64,000 nt of DNA from positions 92,318,001 to 92,382,000 of the forward strand of contig NC_079166.1 of the NCBI RefSeq assembly GCF_947568905.1, in the 5' to 3' direction. Origin of the DNA: Ostrea edulis. Its lineage: Eukaryota. The position numbers and the translations under genes were made by a program. Under the pieces are notes generated by a model, which did no database searches, was not told the DNA's origin, and worked only from the letters and a program-made list of their open reading frames with translations. Shown here in pieces: positions 10,851 through 57,762 of this stretch. Within the stretch, counting starts at the first letter, position 1. Each line of letters begins with the position of its first letter.

Positions 10851-12650
10851 CATGAAAGGTGAAGATAACTCCTATAGGCAATACAAACTAGAGAGTTAAA
10901 CATGGACCCCTGCATATACCAGAGGTGGAATCAGGTGCCTAGGAGTACACATCCGCTGTCGACCTGTCACACCCGCCGTGAGCCCTATATCTTTATCAGA
11001 TAAACGGAGTTATTCGTATTCAAAATCAGTGTGCCAAGAACAGTCCAACAGTCGGTATGAAACACGTCAGACAGCATTTGACCCAATGGTAGGTTACATT
11101 GGCAAACTAGATCGTTATAACGACCATAGAATTTGCAAAATGTTTACTTTAAACAAGACTGTTGAAACCCTTGTATCATCAAGTTGTTTGTCAATAGATT
11201 GCCTCGATTTAAAAACTGATCATAGGCAAAGCAATCTCTTGCGTATGAAAGGTGAAGATAATGAATAGCGATCAATCTCATAACTCCCACACACAATACG
11301 GAAACAGCAAACCAGATCGCCATAACGACCACAGTCTGCGAAATGCTGACCCCAAACGACACTGCCGGAACCCCCGTACCACCAACTCACCTACCAGCAA
11401 CCTGTCTGGACTCAAGAACTGACCATAGCAGAACACGCCTCCGCTCATTGAATCAGCTGAGAGACACACAAACACCATACGAAGGTGATAATGGAACATT
11501 ACCACACAAATATGAGAAGTTGACAATGGAGAAGCCAAAACCATCCCGGGATGTTTGTCACAAATTTGAGCTGCCAGTTTGCCATTGATATCTACCCTCA
11601 ATCAATTGAGAGATATAAACACCATATGCAGGTGATAGTGGAATATTGCTACATAGATATGGGAAGTTGACGATGGAGAAGCTGAAATAATCCTGTTTGT
11701 CATCAAGTGGAGTTATTAGTTTGCCGTTAATATCTACTTTCAATGAAATATTTAAGTGATAAGTAGAAGTTGACGACTCTGTGGTGTCTTTTATTTGGAG
11801 TTCACAGGGATATATCCAATCGATATATGAATGAAAGTCTTTATTGTTAATAGATAAATAAAACGTCGTCGATATACTGTAAACGTATTATATTTGGCGT
11901 GTACGATATTTGGCGGAAATCGTTTTTTCAACAAGTTAGCGTAGATTTGATTTAGCGCATTCCTGAATTACTTTAAACATCTAAATTTACGGATGGCATT
12001 TAGCGATGTACTTGATTTAGCGGAAGCTGCGTTCCGCCAAAGTCGCTAAATAGAATACACAGCCAAATGTAATCTATTTACAGTATTTAAATGTCGAATT
12101 GAAGGCAACAACAAGAATTTTTTCTACTCACATAGAGGTTTTTGAATAAATTCTGCTTCATATAAATATAAAAACAGATCAGCTAATAAAGGAGCACAAT
12201 TCGTGCCCATGTTAATTCCAACAGATTGTTGGAAGACCTGATCATTAAATACCACGAAGATATTGTCAATGAAGAACTCTAGCATATTTCTTATTTCAAT
12301 TTCAGACTATTTGTGCGTGGAGTCAGAGTGGTGTTTAACAAAATGATTTTTTGGATGACTGATCACTAGATATGAATATTTCCGTTTTCCACTTTTGTTG
12401 AAAAAGCAACTGTCTATGATGTCAAAAAGTCTAATCTTTAATTCATCGTGAGGAATGGTCATGCATAGTGTTGAAAAGTCATACGTTTTGATGTTGTTGA
12501 TTTGAGAAAAGTTTTGCGATTTAAAGTTTACTAAAAGTTCTTTAGATTTTTTTAGAATCCACATTTGATTTACACCACTTCTGGCATATGTAGTGGTACA
12601 GTAAGTTTGAAGTTTCTCCTTCACAACTGTTAATATTACGAAACGCATGG
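10851..12650 (-). mobile_element. Rearranged Naiad-type Penelope-like retroelement with decayed reverse transcriptase
   Basis: Minus-strand RT motifs: KTYDFSTL..TIPH, GINMGTNCAPLLADLFL, FNSTFKYIDDV (split by a MITE), and a duplicated FSIVNFPYLCSNIPLSPAYGVYISQL, followed by the same 3' UTR as at 50486. Confidence 0.88.
11877..12083. mobile_element. ~207-bp MITE with TA target duplication
   Basis: TA|CTGTAAA ... TTTACAG|TA; removing it restores the RT YIDD motif on the minus strand. Confidence 0.85.
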
Positions 12651-19295: not shown

Positions 19296-21217
19296 TAGCT
19301 AACTAAACAACCCGAGAGGCATATCTGGGGGAATGCATCTAAACATTAATATTACCAATAGACAGCCCTATATCCTGATCAGGTAAACGGAGTTATCCGC
19401 AGTCAAAATCAGTGTGCCAAGAACGCCTTAACAATCGGTATGAAACACTTCAGACAGCATTTGATATATACAGCACACGTTGATGCAAAGTATCATATCG
19501 ACTGTTAAACGTTTAAACATTCTAGTATTTCCAAAGGAAAACATATAAATTGTAGTATAACATATCTTTGAAACATAATTTACAAATTGACTCAAAAGAA
19601 ACAATCTTAACTACTTATAAAAGGAAATTAATACTATCATTTATGAGAGAATAATTAAAAGCTTTTCAACAATTATGATAGTATACAATATCATTCGAAT
19701 ATCATTCAAACATTGTAAATACACAAATGTCATACGGAACTTCTCGGTGCTATATAATAAACACATTTTCCACTTTGATCGTGGAAGCGTTACGGAACAA
19801 ATCAAAATTAGTCTTGGGGAAATCACTATTTAATCAACTGCAGATGGTTCAAAGAATTGGAAATAAATACATTTACTACATGAAAGGTTAAGATAACGAA
19901 CAGAGATCAATCTCATAACTCCTACAAGCAATATAAAATAGATAGTTGGGCAAACATGAACCCCTGGACACACCAGAGATGAGATCAGGTGCCTAGGAGG
20001 AGTAAGCATCCCCTGTCGACCAGTCACACCCGCCGTGAGCCCTATATCCCGATCAGGTAAACGGAGTTATCCGTAGTCAAAATCAGTGTGCCAAGAACGG
20101 CTTAACAATCGGTATGAAACACATCTGACAGCATTTGATATATATTCTCAAAATGTGTTAGAGCAAGGTGATTTTGGAAATCGAATAACTAACATTTGAA
20201 AGATAACGAATATGTAAATGGGGGGAAAGTATTATACTTTTGATTAAACAACAGTATGCAGCAACACCTTACTTGTGTGAAGCCATAAACCAACTACCAG
20301 ATGTGAAACTCTCTCTAGACTAATAGTCTTCCTGAGGGAAATTTATTTCATAATAGAGGATCTTCAAAATGTTTAAGGCAATAACAACACTTAAGTGAAA
20401 ACCAAACGGTCTGGATTAGATCGAAGCTAGACGCTGTGATATTCTTTGCTTGAATTACAAAATACAGTTGACAAATATGACAACATACTGTTCGAAGACC
20501 TGATCTCCAAATACTTCATGAATTTTGCGAAAGAGAAATTCCATCAAATTTTGCGTAGAATCAGAGTAGTGTTTAACAAAGTAATTTATTTGCATGGTTT
20601 ATCACAAGATATGCATTCCATTTTTATTGACGAAGCAGCTGCATATGAGGCCAAATCGCCTGGTCTTTATTCATTGCGTGCTATTGTAGTGTAAAGTTTG
20701 AAAGGTCGTATAATTGATGTTGTTAATTTGGAAAAGCTCTGGGCTTTAACTATGCTAAATTTGCGTTCGAATGTTTGAAAATCCGCTATTTTCTTCACAG
20801 TATTTCAGGTATCTGTTATGGCACAATATATCTGAATTTTTTCCTTGCGAGCAGTTCACTTTTCTGTGAGGAGTACAGATAGGGGCCTGGTAGAACATTT
20901 ACTGGATCCATCAATTTATCCCTGTAAGGGTTATTGGAATTCAGTATAGGCACGGCACCTCAATTGTTTGTCGTATGTGTAAAACTGAAACGTGATTTTG
21001 AAATTTTTGCGATTTCGAAAGGATCTTTCAGTATAAGTTGGGTCAATAGATAGGGAATTAAAGGCTAGCTTTCTAACATATAGTTGTAATAATGGGCTTT
21101 TGAAGGTAAAGGCAATCGTGTTACAACCAGGACATATTCCTTGTGTAATTTATTTAGTTTCTTATCATTCCTTCAGATCTACTTATTTACTTCTTTTATC
21201 ACTCCTTCAAATTTATT

Positions 21218-38600: not shown

Positions 38601-40738
38601 ATTCTTGAACAGACACAAGTTGTTCAAGGTTTAGAGAAACAGATTGCGCGGTTGAAAGATAATTTATCTCGACAAGGAAACGAGATGCAGAATATACAGA
38701 TGCTGTATGATAGCCAAAGCGAGCAATTAGAAGAAACTGTAAAAGTACTAGATGAAGCCAATAACGTTAGGAGCACGAAGATGGAGGAACAAGATTTGGC
38801 AATTACACATTTATGAAAACGTTTGCAAGAGGAGGAAGAGAAGTGCAAACATTTTTCATCATCTTTCGAGGAAAACCAGCAGTCTGTAATTGGTTTACAA
38901 CAAACAATACAAAGTTTGAATGAAGCCAACCAAGCATACCGGTACTACTATCAGGAAAAAGAAAATGAACTTCATATTGTAGTCAAAGACTCGCCGAGCT
39001 GCAGGCCGATTGCAAACAGCAAGAGGATAAGGTATCTGCTCTAGAAGAACGATGTAACGTTATTTTAATGGAGAAAAATAACTGTGAAAAAGTTTTGAAG
39101 GAAGTGAATAACTCTTATCAGGAAAAAGCGGGACAAAGGGAAATGATCATTACAGACATGAGACAGCAAATTGAAGAGAAAAAACAACAAATTTACATTC
39201 TAGAAGGTGAAAAATCTCGTTTGAATGAACAATTGGGCACTGCATTGGAAGTGAATACTAAACAAGAAATTGAAAAAGTAGAGTTGCGAAATACAATACG
39301 ATTTTCAGAAGAGAAAATTCAAGAACAGAATACTCGTATAATTAACCTTGATATTACTGTGGAAAAGCAGACTGCTTTAATGCACAAGAAAGGAAATATA
39401 GCGGAGGCTTTGCAAAATGATTTAGAGAAGGAAATTGTCACTTTAAAGGAGAGCTTGAAAACAATACACGAAGAACTTTCGATTACAAAAGAGGAATTGG
39501 AGGAAAATTGTAATACTAAGAATCAGCTGCAAATTGAGCAGGATAAGCTAATCAATTTGAAAGAAGAAGTAAATCGTTTGTATGAAGAAAATCAACACCT
39601 TCATAGTGTTGTAGGGGGAAAAGAGCAACAATTGTGGTCTCTGCAAAATACATGTTCTGTGATGAAAAGAGAGGCTGGAGCTTTGAATAAACACGCCGAA
39701 GAAACATTTGAAATTTCTAATGTTGTAGTTGAGCCTATCATTGAAATATCCTCAGAAAAGCTGCTGGGTGCTGTGCCTTCTTCCAAACCAACGGAACTAA
39801 TGAAAACATCCGACACAACTCAAGATCTAAGAGATTATGTAGAACTGCACTTGTGCTAACACTATCTTTTCGGTGTTGTGATTAGTTGCTATGCTCTATA
39901 GACTTTTCATAGCAAGCTCCGTTCATTTCTTACTAACTTCGGCGATATACAAGGTGAAGATAACGAACAGTGATCAATCTCATAACTCCTACAAGCAATA
40001 CAAAATAGATAGTTGGGCAAACACGGACCCCTGGACACACCAGAGGTGGGATCAGGTGCCTAGGAGGAGTAAGCATACCCTATTGACCGGTCACACCTGC
40101 CGTGAGCCCCATATCCTGATCAGGTAAACGGAGTTATCCACAGTCAAATCAGTGTGGCAAGAACGGCTTAACAATCGGTATGAAACACGTCAGACAGCAT
40201 TTGACCCAATTCGAGGTTGTATTGACGAACTAGATCGTATGTATGAAATCCTGCTGCATGCCAGGATGACTTGATACCTATACTTACTTATTCCTATGCA
40301 TTTACTAACTGGTTGGGAGTTGAAACATTCATGTCGAAGTCGAATTTTAAAAGTGAGATTTACTTTTATGACTAATTAGATTTAGGATTTTTCTCATGAA
40401 GAAAAAAAAGCGTATATTATGTGTGATTTAAATGGCTGCCAGAAACAGTTTTACGATTTCAGCAATCGCTTTCTGAAAATACTCTTCTAGTGGTGTTTTT
40501 CCCCCATTGAAATATTCTTTAAATTTAATTAGCTTGCAGAATGAATAATCAAACACAAAATGTATAAATTGTTATCATTGTATTTATCATTGGTAAATAG
40601 TATATAAAGTAGTGGAAAATATTGCTTTGCACTCTTGTATTCCATATTTATCTATTTTTGTAGTCGGAATTCAGTATCTAATCGGTAAACAAGTTACAGC
40701 AGAATTACATGTAGAATTATACATACATACATGTGTAT

Positions 40739-43700: not shown

Positions 43701-46700
43701 TAAACCAGTCCTCAGCAAATGGTAGATGTGTCGAAACCGAGCTGCAAACCACTAAGGAAAAACTCAAATCAATGGAAGATGCCTATGAGCAAATACATAG
43801 CAGGTTAAAGTCATCAGAAGGAAAATGTGAGAAGATGTTGGTGAAGTTGAAAGCCTTCAAAACAAAGTGTGATAAGCTTCAAGAGGAGGTCAATGTTTTG
43901 AAGGAAAGTTCTGCACAAGTTACCAACGAAGGCAATGCTGCTGATAACACTTTAAAAGAAGAACTTGCACTCCGAATTCAAGAACTGGAGGAAACACGCA
44001 GGAAAGTTGAGACTAGCCAGTGGTATATCTCTGAAATTGAGAAACTGAAAGAGAATGAGGGCATGTTGGAGACCACTATAGGAAAACAATCTGAGAGTGA
44101 AAAACGGTTAATTGGTGAGATAGATCTGTTGAAAAATAACTTACAACAAAAGGATGAGAGGTTCCAAAAGAAGGAAAGTGAACTGAAAACACTGATGGAA
44201 ATGAACTCAGAACTGCAGACTCAGATAACATCTTTATTAAGCAAATAGGAAATCAATGATTCTAGAAAAAGGGAACTTCAGGATAGGATTTCTGAATATG
44301 AAAATGAAATGCTTACAATGAGTGATTTAAAATCTTATTTAATAACTGCAGAGCGAAAACAAATAGAACTAGAGAGAAAGTTAAAAGACAGTGTAATGCT
44401 CTGTGACTCATTGGAGGTTGAAAATAAAAATTTTTAAGGATATTGTGGCTAGGATGAGAGAGACAAATTCCAAACTGGAACAAGAGACGAGAACTGCGCA
44501 TGAAAGTGAGACAAAAATCCAAAATCTATTAGAAAGAGTAAAGGAGTTTGAAAACGAACGTGAACAGATGCAGGAAGAAATTGATGGATTTAAAGAAGAT
44601 GTTTCAGAAATGAAGAAAGAAAAGAATGCCTTAAAAGATGAATATGAGTCGCTTGATCTGAAGTTAAAGGAAGTTTTAAATGAAAACAAAGGACTTAAAG
44701 AAAAAATCGGGGCAATCGAATGGAGGTTAGAAGAAGTCGAATCTTTGGAAGAAGAGCTAGAAGAAGTGAGATCTGAACTTGACAGGAAGAACTCGGACTT
44801 AAATCTGACAACAAAGGAAAAAGAGAAGATTCAGGCAGAACTAGAACAAAGCAAACAAAACCAAAATAATCCCTCACAGCATACGCTGAATGAAGATATC
44901 ATGTCTTTAAAAGAAGAGCTGGATAAGAAAATGGAAATGAATAAAGACCTAGAGGACCAAGGGGATTCCTTCCGAGAGGAATTAAATGAGACTGCGACCG
45001 AAATAGACAACTTGAGAGGAGAACTCAGTACAGCTGCCATTAAAGCTTCCATGTTTGACACTTTGCAAAAAGGAATATACTGCTTTAGCGATGAAGTATG
45101 AAGACCTTCAAAATCTGAAATCTTCAAATGATACTGATACAGAGAAATCCCTCAAGGGAGTAGAAGATCAGACTAGATTGTTAAGAGAAGAACTCCACCA
45201 ACCAGCAACAGAGAATGAAGGATTGATCAAGGAATTGAATTTAATCAGGGAAAAATATAACCAGGTCGAAATAATTCAAAAGGAAAATGATAAACTAAAG
45301 ACAGAACTAGAAGTCTTGAAACGAGATGAAAGCAAATCTACGGATACAATTTCTGGTGCAGGTACAGAAACATCAAATAGGATGCAAGAACTTGAAGAGG
45401 AGTTGGAGCTTATCAAAGAAGAACTGAATGAGACAATGTCCGAAAATGAGAAGCTGAGAAGTGAAAATGGGTCAGATTACAAAGCAATTTTGTTTGACAA
45501 ACTTCAGCATGAATATCAAAATTTAAGAGCAGAAGTAGAGTCGATGAAGAAAAGTGGCCCATCCAATGTCAGATGATGACGCAATAAAAGTCCTGAGAAA
45601 TCAACTCGAAACAAGTGAAACGGAAAATGATCATTTAAAATCTCAACTATCAACAATGCGCATCGAATCTTTTGGGAGGAAGGAAGATGTTATGCATTCT
45701 CGATCATCTCCAAGCAATATAGAGAAGGAGCTGGAAGAAAAGCAAGAACAGTATGAATCTCTGATGGAAGACTTTAATTTACTCACCACTGAAAATGACG
45801 AAATGAAGGGAGAAATGGGACATCTGAAAGTTCAGAGTCAAATGTTTAATGAAGTGAAGAAAGAGTACGAATCTCTAAGCGACCAGTATCATAAGTTGTT
45901 GACAGAGAACAGTGAGATGGTTAAGAAAATTGAAGTCTTACACCGGGATTTACAAAACAGCACTAACCATGAATCATCATACATTAAGGAAGAGAGAGAG
46001 CATGCAATAAGAGAAAAGGAGACACTGCTGAGTATTATACAACAGCTAGAGAAGAAATGTGAATATCTTGCTCAGAATAATTCTAACATTAGTCATGAAC
46101 TGCTGGCAGCCGAGGGACAGATACAACAACTTAAATTTGATAATGGGACTTTGAGGGCTCAGTTAGGCATTTCACATGGTGGACAGATGCAGATGGACAA
46201 CTTTCATGCAGACTATCAACGACTTCAAGGACAGTTTTCAACAGCCATGGATCAGAAAAACAAAATACAAATCGAACTCAACCAAATGGCTCATCGACTT
46301 CAGCAAAGAGATGCAAGGTGCCAACAAATGGCTATGCAGGTAAGGTTTGGTAAACATGTGAATTACATGTATCGAATCTGGCACTGCACTTTCTATCAGA
46401 ATCCGTTATAAAAACACAAATGTCATTCATAACATATAGGCATGGGATAAAATAATTCATATTTATAAACGTAGGTAAGCCAGCTGGCGGAAGACAGAAG
46501 TTACCTTAACCCTTTCTCTACCGTATCGGTCAATATGACCGATAGCGCGTAAAAACAGGGCTACGCAAAAGGAGTGTATATAAATCTTTGAAACTACGGA
46601 CGTAATATATATGTTTTATATATAATTTTTTTGGAAATTTTCTATATTTTTTAACTATGTAAAAATCAATTGAATAAATAAAGCCATTAAATTAAAAAAG

Positions 46701-48428
46701 CATTTAAAATGAAAGATGACTTCGTCTAAATATTACGCAACGCTTTGTCGCAAGGCCATTTCCCCCCTCGCTATGATTTTTTTTTATTTTCCCTATTAAT
46801 GCAATATTTTTTATATTTTTGAGAAGCATATATTCCCTGCTTTCAGTACATATAAAAAATATTTTTAATGCCTGGCAAAGTTATAAGAAAATAGCAATTT
46901 TTTGCACATATACGTTGTTTTACGATTTTATTTCTCAATGTTTAAACAGATCGGCGTTTTATCTATATTTATATATGGAAATTGGGAAAAGTAAATACAT
47001 TCTGTAAAAGTAGAGGAAATGTTCTTTTTGATGGACCCTTATTCATATTATAATTCTCTGTAGTTTTTATATTACGATAAAATGAAATTGGGACATGCTG
47101 CGCGGTTTTCTTAAAAATTAGCGACAAGTCGACGTCGCTAACAGCAATCGACGCGTGTCGCACAATAAAGTGGTGAAAACTATTTGTATTGTCCTCTTTT
47201 TTTAGTAAATTCAGTACCTGTTGATACACTAAAACAACATACATACATGTGTGAAATAATCAGCCTGGTATCTCAGCTTTTTTAAAAAAAAAAGAAGAAG
47301 CATAAAACCAATATTGGTTTATAACAGTTACACAACCTACATGTAACTTCATAAATGCTACATCGGCAGATTGAATTTAAAAAAAGATTAATAAAGTACT
47401 TCAAATTCAAATATAAACGTTATATTTGTTCGGAATAGTAATAATTTTTTTTCTCTGCCAAAGAAAGAAAACAAAAAGAAGGTCGCCTATATATAGCCTG
47501 TATACTTTTATTTTTCTGTGATCCGGATCGCGGGCCTCGCGGGGTTTTCTGAAAGTGTGCACGGAGAACACACGTGTTTCCGTTTCAACGAAAACAAACA
47601 AACACAGCTTCACCGTGACTGTCACAGCGAACGCTTGTATTTTACATCTTTAAAACGACCTGATGTCAAAAGAAGAAGATGCCCTGGATCCCCTGTTGCA
47701 GGATGACCCAAACGATCATGCATTCAGTATAAATACGTACATGTAAGTTGATGTAGCCACATAGGCCGACTAAAAAGGGGAAGAAATGCGGTTTTGTTAT
47801 GAAAAATTCACGATTAATTAACCGCGATTTGATGCCATGCTTTGTCGTTTCATGAAAGAAAATATTTATATTTTATGATATCTAAAACAAGTGAATAACA
47901 CTCTGTCCGGGTCCGGCACTTTGATTAACACCCCCCCCCCCCTTTTCCCCAGAATTATCTCCTTACCTGACGCGCGAGTGTAAGAAGGGGTTGTATTTAG
48001 TGTATAATGGGATGGGGTGGTTTTAATCAGACTGGGCATTCACGACCGCTGGTGAGAAGGCTATTTTCCAAGTTTTTTCCATGTTTATAAAAGAAATTAT
48101 CATTCTATGAAAAGAAAACACAATCTGTTAGGAAAACACAATTAGCATTATTGTAATGATAGAATTTATTATCATAATTTGAATTATTTTCTTTATTCTG
48201 CAACAGAAATAAAAACAAAATGTGTGTTTGGGCCAAAATGGGGGTTGGTTAACATCAATCAAAGTCTGATTATGACAGGCTAATGAAAAATCATATTGAT
48301 TTCTCTTTTATCCAAATGCATGTATTTTATATACACTTAATAGCTTATGACCATAAATTACATGTGATCCATACATGCTGGTACTTGTATGCTATGACCT
48401 GATGGGCACGTGTCCCATTCTTGCCGTC

Positions 48429-48657
48429 CTCCTCCGTGGCCGAGTGGTCAGAGCAAATCACACGGCCTCTCACCTCTGTCGGCGCGGGTTCGAATCCCGT
48501 TCGCGCCGGTAAGTGAGAAAGTTTTCCCAGTTTACTTTCGAAAGATCAATGGTCTCTCCCCAGGTATCTGGGTTCTCTCTTCCACCAATAAAAAAACTGG
48601 GTGCCACCAGATAACTGAAAAATTGTTGAGTTTGGCAGAAAACATCAATCAATCAAT
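48429..48657 (+). mobile_element. tRNA-headed SINE (V-SINE-like) in intron 1 of the transposase
   Basis: A box TGGCCGAGTGG, B box GGTTCGAATCCC, tail CCACCAATAAAA...AACATCAATCAATC. Sister copy at 56981-57225. Confidence 0.8.
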
Positions 48658-49929
48658 CCCCCTCTCTAATTTCGACTAAATCCACAGCCCATCAGAGTAC
48701 CATACAAGGGGATTTAGACACTGGGTACCATTAAGAAGCAATTCAATTCAACTTTTATATCTGGGGTCATTCACTTTCCCTCAGAGTTTCAGTATTTTCG
48801 CTGGACCCTGTAGGTTTTAACCTGAATTTCTTCAGTATTTGCCCTCGTGTATAATATATGCTAGGCATAATGCAGATACCTACATGATACATTTTTTTTT
48901 CATTACCCACTCTGCTACTCTCGCAATGTATAATACAATATTCGATTCATTTCTAACACATGTATGCAATCCCTTACTTTATCTTTAAATAAATTTGAGT
49001 AAATAAATTTAAGTGCGAAACTGTTCCATGCTACCGTGAAACTTAGATTTTGCTTTTTAAACATAAACCAACAATTCTTAATTGTAATTTCTTTTCTTCT
49101 TTAAAAAGGGTATTGACATCCCAATATTTAGTGGGAAGTTTCCAGGTATCATCCACTAGCGACAGTCTACTGACAAATCCAGACATGCATTGGAAGGATG
49201 CTGATGTGGAGGACACAGGAACACCTGATCACAGAACTGTGGCATTTCATTCGGGGTGACAACCTGGCTTTCAGTTGGTATGACTCTTTGATGTTGAATA
49301 TAGGGTTTAATCAGTATAAATGTGATTAACATTCAAATAAATTCAGATAATACATTCACAATTGGAATCATGGCATTATGGTACACTGATATGTGTGTAC
49401 CATTTTACTGGGTTTTTTTTTTTCCTGCATAACTAGGGATCGTATACATACAAAATAAGACAATTTCTAATTAGTTTCTAATTATAAGGTATGACACGTT
49501 TTAAGGTATGGTGGCCAATACTGATTTTATTTTTATTTGCAATTTTCTTTCAGATATGGGACTCTATTATTCGGAAAACTGCAGATTTTATGAAGCTGTC
49601 TTTGACAGAAGATTTGGTTTTCTCCATCTGTGTTGCCACCAACCATTATGCTGAGATAGTCATAACTAGGGGGAAGGGTTGCCATATACTTCCCAAGGAA
49701 GTTTGCAGCCTCTCACTGAAGAGGAACTGTACAGGTATTACTAGTTTTAAAAACCGATATTGTGGCAGTGATTTCCAGTTTCAAAAGAATAATAAAATGC
49801 ATAGTAAAAAGATTACCTTTACCAAAATTAATCTGGCTGTGAATGTACATGTAACTCATTTATTAAATATGTATTACAATTACCTCTGATAAAATTTCAT
49901 AAGTAATTAAATTCATACTTTTCAGAGGG

Positions 49930-50703
49930 TCTTGATTATCGAAAACATTTACAGAGCCAATTTGAGTATTCAAAAGCTTTGACAATACATTAGTATTTAG
50001 GACTAAGTATTAACGATGACGTTTTGTCTATTAACAATGATAGCTTTCATTCATATGTCGATTTGATATATCCCTGTGAGCTCGAAATAAAGGACACCAC
50101 AGAGTCGTCCACTTCTGCTTCATACTTAGATATTTTATTGAAAGTAGACATTAACGGCAAACTAACAACTCAACTGTATGACAAACGGGATGATTTCAGC
50201 TTCTCCATCGTTAACTTCCCACATTTATGTAGCAATATTCCATTATCACCTGCATATGGTGTTTATATATCTCAACTGATTCGATATGCAAGAGCTTGTT
50301 CTGGGTATAGTCAGTTTTTAAATCGAGGTAAGCTACTGACAAACAAGTTGATGGTACAGGGATTTCAACAGTCTCGATTGAAGTCAGCATTTCGCAAATT
50401 CTATGGTCGTTATAACGATCTGGTTCGTCAATACAACCTCGCATTGGGTCAAATGCTGTCTGACGTGTTTCATACCGATTGTTAAGCCGTTCTTGGCACA
50501 CTGATTTTGACTGCGGATAACTCCGTTTACCTGATCAGGATATGGGGCTCACGACGGGTGTGACCGGTCAACAGGGGATACTTACTCCTCCTAGGCACCT
50601 AATCCCGCCTGTGTGTCCAGGGGTCCGTGTTTGCCCAACTATCTATTTTGTATTGCTTGTAGGAGTTATGAGATTGATCACTGTTCGTTATCTTCACCTT
50701 GCA
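49930..50703 (+). mobile_element. 5'-truncated Naiad-type Penelope-like element: RT C-terminus plus 3' UTR
   Basis: ORF 50024-50485 (..DDVLSINN..LDILL..TTQLYDKRDDFSFSIVNFPHLCSNIPLSPAYGVYISQLIRYARACS..DVFHTDC*) ends without a C-terminal GIY-YIG endonuclease, as expected for N-terminal-EN Naiad PLEs. Confidence 0.85.
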
Positions 50704-51984
50704 TTAAGAAATACTTTTTTTCCAGATTTCTGTGCATTATCTTATACACGCCTGATGTGAAGTTCCAGTCGATAGACAGATATTGGTCAACGCATGCCCC
50801 TGTCGGAACAACTCGTTATCAAGAATTATGTCTCGAAATAGGTTTCAAGAGGTTGAATATAAGAACATTTTTGTTAAATATGATGCAAGTACATTTAAAT
50901 CTAGTGATTGAAAGTAAGTACTTGAACATTCGTTTATGTTGAACTTGGAGAGGAAAAATGGTTAGTACTTTTTGATAACATTTGATAAGGTGTTGTTGCT
51001 TAGCAACCAAATATAATTGAATAAAAATAGATTATTTTAGATTAACAATAATTGAAAGATCTTTGTTTTAATGTTGCAATACTTATTATATTTAATGGAA
51101 CATAATGGCAAAACGTCATATTATTAGAAAATGATGGACAAGTATATAAAGTATGAAGGTTCCATTTGATGACCTTTGATCTTAATTCTCTTGATTATAT
51201 TTTTTGTTAAAAACCTTTTAAAATGATTAAGATCTATTTAAAGATTAGATTTTTAAAATAATGTGACATTTACTAATCATCATGGATTGTAATCACGTTT
51301 AAATTGTGTCGAATGGATGCAGAAAGGCAAATTATGGTCAAAATTGTACTATGAGTGTTGTTACTTAGCAACCAAAAATATTTGTTTGTCAATAAAATTG
51401 ATTAATTTGATTTTGTTCTTTTTGTAGTATATTAAAAGGCACATCAGCTCATACATTTAGAATTTCCTATTTTTGACTCTAATCTAGTGAGAGGGGTCGT
51501 AATATATATATTTCAGAGAAAAAAGATTGCAAAAATGTGCACTTATATGACCTTTGACCCCGTAGACGTCTTTGAGGTCATGGGATACATTGACAAATTT
51601 TATAAGAAAGTGTTCCCTATCCAATTCCTAACAAAATTATATGTCATATGCCTACTCCAAATCATGATCCATGCAGATTTAAATCGATTTAAAAATGCTG
51701 TCATTTAGTCTTTAAAAACCTCTAAAATGTGCCGGTAGAGAAAGGGTTAATGTTCAGCTTGGAAACCTTTCGAAATCATTAAGAGAAAAGGAGAATGAGC
51801 TGCGTTCTTTACAACAGCAATACAAAATCCTTTATCAGACGCACATGTCACCTCAGTCCAAGGTAAGATGCGATGTATTCATTCATTTCTTTAAAAAATG
51901 AATCCACATTATTATACATCAAACATTGAGACCTATTCCTGTTAAACATGTTATTATTACTTGGTAAACTGCTGTACTTTTAGA

Positions 51985-52833: not shown

Positions 52834-52990
52834 CTTTTAGATAATAGAATAGGAAACAAAGACCATTAACATGGCCATGCAACGGGCTTCTTCAGTAGAA
52901 ATAACTGCAGTTTCAGAGCAGCGAATTGTTCCATAAGAAACTAAAATCACCATGTCTGCCCAGACGAAATGGACGAAATCAGACAACTTC

Positions 52991-53230
52991 GCTCTAAGTA
53001 TGTATTTTGATAATTGTTCTACTGGCTCTAAGTATGTATTTTGATAATTGTTCTACTGGCTCTAAGTATGTATTTTGATAATTGTTCTACTGGCTCTAAG
53101 TATGTATTTTAATCATTGTTCTACTGGCTCTAAGTAGGTATTGTGATAATTGTTCTGCTGGCTCTAAGTATGTATTTTGATAATTGTTCTGCTGGCTCTA
53201 AGTATGTATTTTGATAATTGTTCTACTGGC
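52991..53230 (+). repeat. 34-bp tandem repeat (about 7 copies) spanning a splice donor
   Basis: Unit GCTCTAAGTATGTATTTTGATAATTGTTCTACTG starting at 52991, 53025 and onward; the first copy holds the donor at 52998. Confidence 0.95.
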
Positions 53231-56980: not shown

Positions 56981-57225
56981 GGGGCCTCCGTGGCTGAGTG
57001 GTTAGAGCATCGCGCTCAAAATCACACGGCTCTAACCTATGGTCGGCTCGAGTTCAAATCCCGCTCGCGCCGGTAAGTAGGATAGTTTCCCAGTTTACTT
57101 TCGGAAGGTCGGTGGTCTCTTCCCATGTACAGTGTGTCTGGGGTATATCTTCTACCAATAAAAACAGGGCGCCACCAGATAATTGAGAATTTGATTAGTG
57201 TTTCGGGAAAACAGCTAAACAATAC
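56981..57225 (+). mobile_element. tRNA-headed SINE (V-SINE-like), sister of the 48429 copy
   Basis: A box TGGCTGAGTGG, B-box-like GAGTTCAAATCCC, shared body CGCGCCGGTAAGT...CCCAGTTTACTTTCG. Confidence 0.8.
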
Positions 57226-57762
57226 AATATATGGCATAGTGTATATGAACAGGTATGACTGTAATTGTTGGGTTTTGTAGCTTTGTGTTGGGTGGTTGTA
57301 GTGTCACGTTGTAATGTGTGTACTTCAGGGAATACATCTGCTTTTCCAGTCGAACTTTGAATCGCTTGATGCGCATGCGCCCAGGAATCCGGAAGATAAT
57401 ATGGGGTTACTTTCTCCTGCTTCACCTGCTGGTCATTGGATTCTTGTTTGGACTTTTATAACGTACCTTTTCACATATATGTCCAGAGAGAGCAGTTATC
57501 CATTTCTTGTGAAAAACCAATTTAAATGTTCATTTTAATCATGCTTTGTCGCATTAGCGGTCGTGCAATCAAATATACCTTATGTTGTTTACTTTTTGAG
57601 TGAATGAATGAATGCACGAATTCTGTAACAACATGCAATGTATAATGAATAGTGTATGCTGCGATATTGTGATTCTGTATAAGATTGTGTGTAGCTCACA
57701 ATTTTTAAAATTATATAATGCTTATTTGTGTATATATGTAGATAAGAGGACATAAATAAATT

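What the first reader, a model, noticed from the sequence alone, without database searches (positions are those of the whole stretch)
47663..50851. piggyBac transposase gene interrupted by three spliceosomal introns inside a bona fide TIR/TSD-bounded element
Mobile piggyBac transposases are typically single-ORF; multi-intron structure is mainly known from domesticated genes such as PGBD5. Here canonical GT-AG introns (47743-49108, 49278-49553, 49735-50725) join in matching phases (2, 0, 2) and restore contiguous piggyBac N-terminal motifs within an element that clearly transposed. This points to a lineage of intron-rich mobile piggyBacs in bivalves. Whether it is already catalogued needs a database check.
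Basis: partly seen in the sequence, partly recalled or inferred. Interest (0 to 1): 0.75.

Follow-up and report, generated by a model that had tools for sequence, protein, structure and literature searches.

The report
Dead copy of intron-bearing oyster piggyBac
This is a broken, internally deleted copy of a jumping gene (piggyBac) whose enzyme gene carries real introns; intact relatives in oysters, mussels and scallops share four introns at the same places, which published work on mobile piggyBacs does not describe.

Summary
The element is real. It spans 46510-51746 (5237 bp), has perfect 14-bp inverted ends (CCCTTTCTCTACCG) and TTAA on both sides. The three gaps are real GT-AG introns, not later insertions.

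Other copies of this element family in the Ostrea edulis assembly share these gaps. Intact relatives of 599-617 aa in Saccostrea and Mytilus, and a 472-aa Pecten model, have four introns at identical alignment columns with phases 2,2,2,1. In Mytilus galloprovincialis a public-run contig is the exact spliced form, 100% identical to two TTAA/TIR-bounded genomic copies.

- This copy is dead. It has a TGA in exon 2, frameshifts in exons 3 and 4, and a 1.85-kb internal deletion that removed the fourth intron and the whole catalytic exon.
- About 260 bp of intron 1 and 696 bp of intron 3 are later nested repeats.
- The ancestral donor of intron 2 lies 15 nt downstream of the one proposed.

The copy belongs to an amplified non-autonomous subfamily that must be moved in trans.

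NCBI already annotates the relatives as PGBD4-like genes. The papers I could search describe mobile piggyBacs as single-ORF, with Pokey's one intron the only exception I found. Repbase and Dfam could not be checked. The scan had already noted this stretch for another reason (s1-271564).

The parts
46506..46509 (+). Left TTAA target-site duplication
   Evidence: The same TTAA recurs at 51747-51750.
46510..46523 (+). 5' terminal inverted repeat, CCCTTTCTCTACCG
   Evidence: (I3). It is perfectly complementary to 51733-51746. Near-identical TIRs occur in L001, L002 and L004.
46524..46544 (+). Subterminal palindrome: 9-nt arms TATCGGTCA / TGACCGATA with a 3-nt loop
   Evidence: Read. A similar ACCGGTCAAT.TGACCGG lies next to the TIR in the Mytilus copies. 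I infer a transposase-binding role.
46545..47662 (+). 5' non-coding region, presumed to hold the promoter and 5' UTR
   Evidence: Collinear with L002, L003, L001 and L004. In Mytilus the transcript contig starts 78 nt before the ATG, inside the element. No promoter was mapped here.
47663..47742 (+). Exon 1 remnant: ATG plus acidic motif (EEDALDPLLQDD)
   Evidence: The motif is conserved in all aligned full-length relatives.
47743..49108 (+). Intron 1, equivalent to conserved intron A (phase 2); GT..AG
   Evidence: The acceptor context ttaaaaag is conserved in L001 and L003.
48401..48662 (+). Nested SINE-like repeat inside intron 1; boundaries approximate
   Evidence: Absent from the collinear copy L002. 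Another copy lies at 56985-57228. Depth is far higher in all DNA runs. No tRNA or Rfam match.
49109..49277 (+). Exon 2 remnant, with an in-frame TGA at 49257-49259 where relatives have Arg. The ancestral exon probably ran on to 49292.
   Evidence: Alignment of donor regions. P0004 uses the downstream donor.
49278..49553 (+). Intron 2, equivalent to conserved intron B. The donor at 49278 is specific to this subfamily; the ancestral phase-2 donor corresponds to GT at 49293.
49554..49734 (+). Exon 3 remnant (181 nt against 183 in intact relatives). It is the start of the DDE_Tnp_1_7 homology (..DFMKL..TNHYAE.. then ..LTEEELY) and has two 1-nt deletions.
   Evidence: The P0002 counterpart matches Pfam PF13843 positions 6-82.
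49735..50725 (+). Intron 3, equivalent to conserved intron C (phase 2); GT..AG. It was about 295 bp before the nested insertion.
50009..50703 (+). Nested high-copy repeat inside intron 3, with a 153-aa ORF at 50024-50485. TTAA is duplicated at its ends.
   Evidence: At least 15 copies in the window share a common 3' end. DNA contigs of X8 and X12 skip 50009-50702. It is absent in L002 and L003. The ESM Atlas feature search places the ORF near clusters carrying PF26215 HTH_animal, which is a lead only.
50726..50847 (+). Exon 4 remnant: first ~122 of 173 nt (..FLCIILY..DRYWSTH.. then a frameshift, then ..MSRNRFQ)
50840..50851 (+). Junction of the internal deletion, about 1.85 kb relative to the longer Ostrea copy L004 (its 11594 joined to its 13438)
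   Evidence: L002 and L003 share the same junction.
50852..51732 (+). 3' non-coding region of the element
   Evidence: Collinear with L004 13438-14350 and L002 6850-7894.
51733..51746 (-). 3' terminal inverted repeat
51747..51750 (+). Right TTAA target-site duplication

Best explanation
The stretch is the 5' two-thirds of a 5.2-kb non-autonomous piggyBac element.

Origin. It descends from a family whose autonomous form is about 5.5-8.4 kb. That form encodes a roughly 600-aa DDD transposase in five exons: four short N-terminal exons separated by spliceosomal introns A-D (phases 2,2,2,1), then one exon of about 1.17 kb holding almost the whole catalytic core and the Cys-rich tail.

How the family works. 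Transcription starts inside the element. The host spliceosome removes the four introns. The transposase then binds the 13-14-bp CCC... ends and cuts and pastes the element at TTAA.

This copy. Its subfamily lost the end of exon 4, intron D and the catalytic exon in one 1.85-kb deletion. It kept both ends, so it can only be moved by transposase supplied in trans. This copy later picked up a nonsense mutation, further frameshifts and two nested repeats.

Shown: the ends and TSD, the intron positions and their conservation, the deletion, the decay, and splicing in a Mytilus relative.
Inferred: splicing in the oyster, trans-mobilisation, and any regulatory role of the introns.
For: - TIR and TTAA are present.
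- The family is multi-copy, intron sequence included. Element bins in DNA run X8 are about 100-400 times deeper than the flank. Copies L002 and L003 are collinear at 77-89% identity.
- Exact exon chains were obtained for P0001, P0002, P0004, P0006, P0010, P0060, P0062, P0064 and P0068. Introns B, C and D fall at identical alignment columns and phases in every model spanning those positions that has an undisrupted frame there (P0001, P0002 and P0006 depart at B or C), and exons of 183-186 and 167-173 nt are conserved.
- TTAA plus TIR bound the elements in Ostrea (L001, L002, L004), Saccostrea (L008), Pecten (L005) and Mytilus (L011).
- Two Mytilus copies are 99.8% identical over 5.56 kb at different loci.
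- Logan contig L012 equals the five exons joined, at 99.5-100% identity.
- P0068 matches the piggyBat transposase structure 9c0f at 6e-27, with the DE, D and DYN catalytic motifs aligned, and Pfam PF13843 over its full length.
- The deletion junction is mapped against L004.
Against: - No read-level RNA evidence for splicing was obtained in the oyster. The only RNA-like run (X1) is contigs, and 'RNA' is a guess. Its roughly 10-fold higher depth over exon bins is suggestive at best.
- I could not verify that the run behind L012 is RNA.
- No fully intact copy was found among the O. edulis proteins. The best, L004, has a stop in the DYN motif.
- Most gene models come from one pipeline, which may use protein homology.
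- No TIR was found for the M. californianus locus L009 or for L007.
Confidence: 0.85

Rival explanations
1. The gaps are not introns. They are later insertions of other repeats into a once continuous piggyBac ORF, and the GT/AG ends are chance.
For: About 260 bp of gap 1 and 696 bp of gap 3 are indeed nested repeats absent from sister copies. A more distant relative, P0018 (34% identical to P0068), reads straight through positions B, C and D.
Against: After the nested repeats are removed, about 1.1 kb, 276 bp and 295 bp remain, and all Ostrea copies share them. The same codon positions and phases are interrupted in Saccostrea, Mytilus and Pecten by sequences of quite different lengths, 233-2227 bp. 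The nested repeat ends 21 bp before the acceptor, so the pyrimidine tract and AG are native. The Mytilus contig removes exactly these gaps.
Confidence: 0.03
2. The intron-bearing genes are domesticated host genes of the PGBD type, not mobile elements. The copy here is only a pseudogene fragment of such a gene.
For: NCBI names the models 'piggyBac transposable element-derived protein 3/4-like'. Multi-intron piggyBac genes known from papers are domesticated: PGBD5, PiggyMac and TPB2 (PMC3902484, PMC5381638). No TIR was found around L009 or L007.
Against: TIRs and TTAA duplications bound the copies in four genera. The family is highly repeated. Two Mytilus copies at different loci are 99.8% identical. 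An amplified deletion derivative exists. The copy here sits inside a host coding exon.
Confidence: 0.05
3. The exon-intron models are artefacts of gene prediction that steps around stops in decayed single-ORF copies.
For: The models P0001 and P0002 for the decayed subfamily use a subfamily-specific donor that happens to restore the frame after a 1-nt deletion. P0004's extra exons 5-7 look like such patching.
Against: Intact models of 599-617 aa need no patching, and they share exon lengths across species annotated by different groups. The contiguous 1920-bp contig L012 is independent of any gene predictor's splicing.
Confidence: 0.05

Closest known systems
Canonical piggyBac (Trichoplusia ni IFP2) and piggyBat transposons
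   Same: TTAA target duplication, short CCC... TIRs, and a DDE_Tnp_1_7 transposase with a DDD triad and a C-terminal Cys-rich domain in the intact relatives. P0068 matches 9c0f at 6e-27 and 6x67 at 4e-17.
   Different: Those elements are about 2.5 kb with one uninterrupted ORF. This family is 5.5-8.4 kb with four conserved introns in the first third of the gene.
Pokey (Daphnia piggyBac element)
   Same: A mobile, TIR-bounded piggyBac whose transposase needs splicing. Its 68-84-bp intron was confirmed by RT-PCR (PMC3849761).
   Different: Pokey has one short intron. Here there are four, each of 174-2227 bp in the exon chains mapped, conserved across three bivalve orders.
PGBD5, PiggyMac, TPB2 (domesticated multi-intron piggyBac genes)
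   Same: Several spliceosomal introns lie within a piggyBac-derived gene (PMC3902484, PMC5381638).
   Different: Those are single-copy host genes without TIRs or TSDs, and PGBD5 lacks the canonical triad. This family keeps its ends, TSDs, multiple copies and the DDD triad. Whether any intron positions are shared with PGBD5 was not tested.
TLEWI, Tc1-like elements with introns in Pteriomorphia (bioRxiv 10.1101/656579)
   Same: A DNA-transposon transposase with 2-5 GT-AG introns, restricted to the same bivalve subclass, and with intron-free transcripts found.
   Different: It belongs to a different superfamily. TLEWI is low-copy and lacks TIRs, and was interpreted as possibly co-opted. The piggyBac family here is TIR-bounded and has amplified.
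Drosophila P element
   Same: A cut-and-paste element whose transposase gene has several introns, and which gives rise to internally deleted non-autonomous copies (established knowledge).
   Different: It is an unrelated transposase superfamily. Tissue-specific intron retention is shown for P but not tested here.

Membership tests
piggyBac superfamily element | TTAA target-site duplication | tested here: met
   TTAA at 46506-46509 and 51747-51750. With one TTAA kept, the host reading frame is continuous.
piggyBac superfamily element | Short TIRs of 12-19 bp beginning C[C/A/T][C/A/T] (criterion from PMC5381638) | tested here: met
   14-bp perfect TIR CCCTTTCTCTACCG.
piggyBac superfamily element | Encodes a DDE_Tnp_1_7 (PF13843) transposase | tested here: inconclusive
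   The window's exon pieces give no Pfam hit alone. Exon 3 is 78% identical to P0002, which matches PF13843 positions 6-82 at 6.9e-13. Only the first quarter or so of the domain survives here.
Autonomous piggyBac element | Intact ORF with the catalytic DDD triad and Cys-rich domain | tested here: not met
   A stop, frameshifts and a 1.85-kb deletion of the catalytic exon. The feature is met in relatives P0068, P0064 and P0062.
Spliceosomal intron | GT..AG borders with a pyrimidine tract | tested here: met
   All three gaps qualify. The tract of intron 3 is native, not part of the nested repeat.
Spliceosomal intron | Position and phase conserved among homologues | tested here: met
   Introns B, C and D share the same alignment columns and phases 2, 2, 1 in every intact or near-intact model that spans them, across five species (the decayed or patched models P0001, P0002 and P0006 differ at B or C). 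Intron A is phase 2 in a variable region.
Spliceosomal intron | Removed from the RNA | tested here: inconclusive
   This is met for the Mytilus relative if L012 is cDNA: it is an exact exon join at 99.5-100% identity, with two extra G at its 5' end. For the oyster there is only a contig-depth contrast in a run guessed to be RNA.
Domesticated PGBD-like host gene | Single copy, with no TIR or TSD | tested here: not met
   The family is multi-copy, with TIR and TTAA in four genera.

The most novel reading that the evidence does not exclude
A still-active piggyBac lineage has kept four spliceosomal introns at fixed positions across oysters, mussels and scallops. These introns may be functional: they could restrict transposase production to certain tissues through regulated splicing, as in the P element, or shield the element from host silencing directed at intronless invaders.
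Probability: 0.2. Interest if true: 0.7.

Novelty: new variant of a known kind. Interest (0 to 1): 0.45.

Why it matters
Reviews of the piggyBac superfamily treat mobile elements as TIR-UTR-single ORF units and treat introns as a mark of domestication (PMC3902484, PMC5381638). A TIR-bounded, recently active family with four conserved introns shows that intron content alone does not separate domesticated from mobile piggyBacs.

It also explains why genome annotations label these elements as 'PGBD4-like genes'. It parallels the intron-bearing Tc1-like elements reported from the same bivalve subclass. And it offers natural material for asking whether splicing controls DNA-transposon activity in molluscs.

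The copy in this window is itself an ordinary dead derivative.

Tried and rejected
- Pfam on the single exon translations found no piggyBac hit because the pieces are too short.
- ARAGORN and Rfam on the element found nothing, so the SINE-like insert stays unclassified.
- Read laying: all four runs were contigs. The 15 joints listed (of 1,470) showed nested-repeat skips, none at the intron borders. This neither supports nor refutes splicing in the oyster.
- An exact exon chain for the Tegillarca model P0011 could not be found with GT/GC-AG rules, so that model was left out.
- TIR search around L009 (M. californianus) and L007 found no convincing pair.
- My first count of stops in the last exon of L004 used the wrong frame. 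It was corrected.
- Not done: a tree with PGBD1-5 and Pokey, because those sequences were not in hand.
Full report
**Observation**

The window holds a piggyBac-type element at 46510-51746 (5237 bp). A perfect 14-bp inverted repeat (CCCTTTCTCTACCG) sits at both ends, and each end is flanked by TTAA.

The four proposed exons are 47663-47742, 49109-49277, 49554-49734 and 50726-50851. They are separated by gaps that start GT and end AG after pyrimidine runs.

The joined frame is not open:
- TGA lies at 49257-49259, where relatives have Arg.
- The homologous frame shifts within exon 3 and again within exon 4.
- The straight phases are 2, 0, 1.
- Single exon translations give no Pfam hit.

**Identity**

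A phmmer search with exon 3 against 1.84 billion representatives returned four relatives. Three of them, P0001, P0002 and P0004, were traced to the Ostrea edulis assembly GCA_947568905.1; NCBI names P0004 a piggyBac-derived protein.
- P0001 is 73% identical over 60 aa, and P0002 is 78% identical.
- P0002 and P0004 match Pfam DDE_Tnp_1_7.

These models are the same exons joined at the same sites. The peptide is therefore piggyBac-like, and the window is very probably from O. edulis, as earlier notes of the scan also say.

**Are the gaps introns or insertions?**

I derived exact exon chains by requiring the spliced translation to equal the deposited protein.
- Intact relatives have five exons: Saccostrea cucullata P0064 (617 aa), Mytilus galloprovincialis P0068 (607 aa) and M. 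californianus P0062 (599 aa).
- The Pecten maximus model P0010 and the Ostrea models P0004 and P0006 share the same internal exons of 183 and 173 nt; P0064 and P0068 have 186 and 167 nt at the same positions.
- In a MAFFT alignment, introns B, C and D fall at identical columns with phases 2, 2, 1 in every model whose frame is undisrupted there (the decayed or patched models P0001, P0002 and P0006 differ at B or C). Intron A is phase 2 within the variable acidic N-terminus.
- Intron lengths range from 174 to 2227 bp, so these are not copies of one inserted repeat.
- The window's introns 1, 2 and 3 correspond to A, B and C.

Two details refine the picture. The longer copies L001 and L004 have no GT there and use the donor that corresponds to 49293.

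A more distant relative reads straight through positions B, C and D. This is P0018, in a 3.75-kb TTAA/CCCTTTGGTG-bounded element, 34% identical to P0068. The introns are therefore a feature of this bivalve lineage, not of all its kin.

**Splicing**

P0068 is encoded by two M. galloprovincialis genomic loci, L010 and L011, each with four introns. It is also encoded by a 1920-bp Logan contig (L012) in which the ORF is continuous.

L012 aligns to the genome in five blocks at 99.5-100% identity, exactly the five exons. It includes 78 nt upstream of the ATG and two unmatched G at its 5' end. The simplest reading is a spliced mRNA. I could not confirm the library type of that run.

For the oyster, run X1 (guessed to be RNA) shows summed contig depth of about 400 over exon-bearing bins and about 30 over the neighbouring intron bins. 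The contrast is 1.3-3-fold in the DNA-like runs X8 and X12. The tool warns that contig depth cannot rank parts of a gene, so I count this only as a hint. No intron-removing joints were among the 15 listed.

**Mobility**

TTAA plus TIR pairs bound the following elements:
- Ostrea copies L001 (9.4 kb), L002 (4.8 kb) and L004 (6.6 kb).
- A Saccostrea element of 8.4 kb around the intact P0064.
- A Pecten element of 7.8 kb.
- The Mytilus element of 5.56 kb.

The two Mytilus copies are 99.8% identical and lie at different loci. In DNA run X8 the whole element, introns included, is about 100-400 times deeper than the flank.

P0068 matches the piggyBat transposase structure (9c0f, 6e-27) and the T. 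ni piggyBac transposase (6x67, 4e-17). The DE, D and DYN catalytic motifs align, and it has a Cys-rich tail. These are mobile elements, not domesticated genes.

**State of this copy**

Against the longer Ostrea copy L004, the window matches up to L004 11594 and resumes at L004 13438, with about 8 bp shared at the junction (50840-50851). This 1.85-kb deletion removed the end of exon 4, intron D and the catalytic exon. L002 and L003 share the same junction, so a deleted, non-autonomous subfamily has amplified.

Two nested repeats are specific to this copy:
- A SINE-like piece at about 48401-48662.
- A high-copy repeat at 50009-50703 with TTAA duplicated at its ends. It is absent in L002 and L003 and is skipped by contigs of X8 and X12. 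It ends 21 bp before the acceptor of intron 3, so that acceptor is native.

L004 itself is nearly intact, with a single stop inside the DYN motif of the last exon. No fully intact O. edulis protein turned up in the two word searches.

**Mechanism**

Shown:
- The structure, conservation and ends of the family.
- Splicing in one relative, subject to the library caveat.
- The deletion and decay of this copy.

Inferred:
- The family is transcribed from within the element.
- It depends on the host spliceosome to make a roughly 600-aa transposase.
- It moves by cut and paste at TTAA.
- The deleted subfamily is mobilised in trans through its shared ends and the subterminal palindrome, which is conserved between oyster and mussel.

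**Comparison with what is known**

Pavelitz et al. (PMC3902484) and Bouallegue et al. (PMC5381638) describe mobile piggyBacs as single-ORF and list introns only for domesticated genes. Pokey has one RT-PCR-confirmed intron (PMC3849761). Intron-bearing Tc1-like elements are reported from the same bivalve subclass (bioRxiv 10.1101/656579).

Four literature searches found no description of a multi-intron mobile piggyBac. Repbase and Dfam could not be consulted, and NCBI already annotates these loci as PGBD3/4-like genes. I therefore rate this a new variant of a known kind, of moderate interest. The copy in the window is itself ordinary.

**Verdict**

Noticed in passing
window 46475-46509 and 51751-51857: The element splits a host coding exon. 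With one TTAA kept, the two halves read as one open coiled-coil exon (VSQLAEDRSYLNVQLGNLSKSLREKENEL...) between an acceptor at 46474 and a donor at 51858, after the exon that ends at 46339. This haplotype may therefore carry a disrupted allele. The scan noted this separately as s1-271564.
   Followed up: partly
window 50024-50485; other copies e.g. 39947-40238, 10865-11878, 19858-20138: A very abundant repeat has at least 15 copies in the window, a common 3' end (..CTTCACCTTGCAT) and variable 5' ends. It carries a 153-aa ORF with no Pfam hit. ESM Atlas feature neighbours carry PF26215 HTH_animal, so it is probably the tail of a retroelement.
   Followed up: partly
L001 2856-21621: The 9.4-kb Ostrea piggyBac copy lies inside a larger pair of 20-bp inverted repeats (19 of 20 matching), each next to TTAA and about 18.8 kb apart. 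This may be a second, larger TTAA element nesting it.
   Followed up: no
L013 4410-8172: A compact 3.75-kb TTAA/CCCTTTGGTG-bounded piggyBac from an ENA assembly has no introns at positions B-D. An acidic N-terminal piece lies in another frame about 1 kb upstream, so it may have only the first intron.
   Followed up: partly
window 52985-53230: A tandem array of a roughly 37-bp unit (ctctaagtatgtattttgataattgttctactgg) begins right at an apparent exon end plus splice donor (..cgctctaag|gtatgt). It resembles the splice-donor minisatellites that other notes of this scan report for this genome.
   Followed up: no
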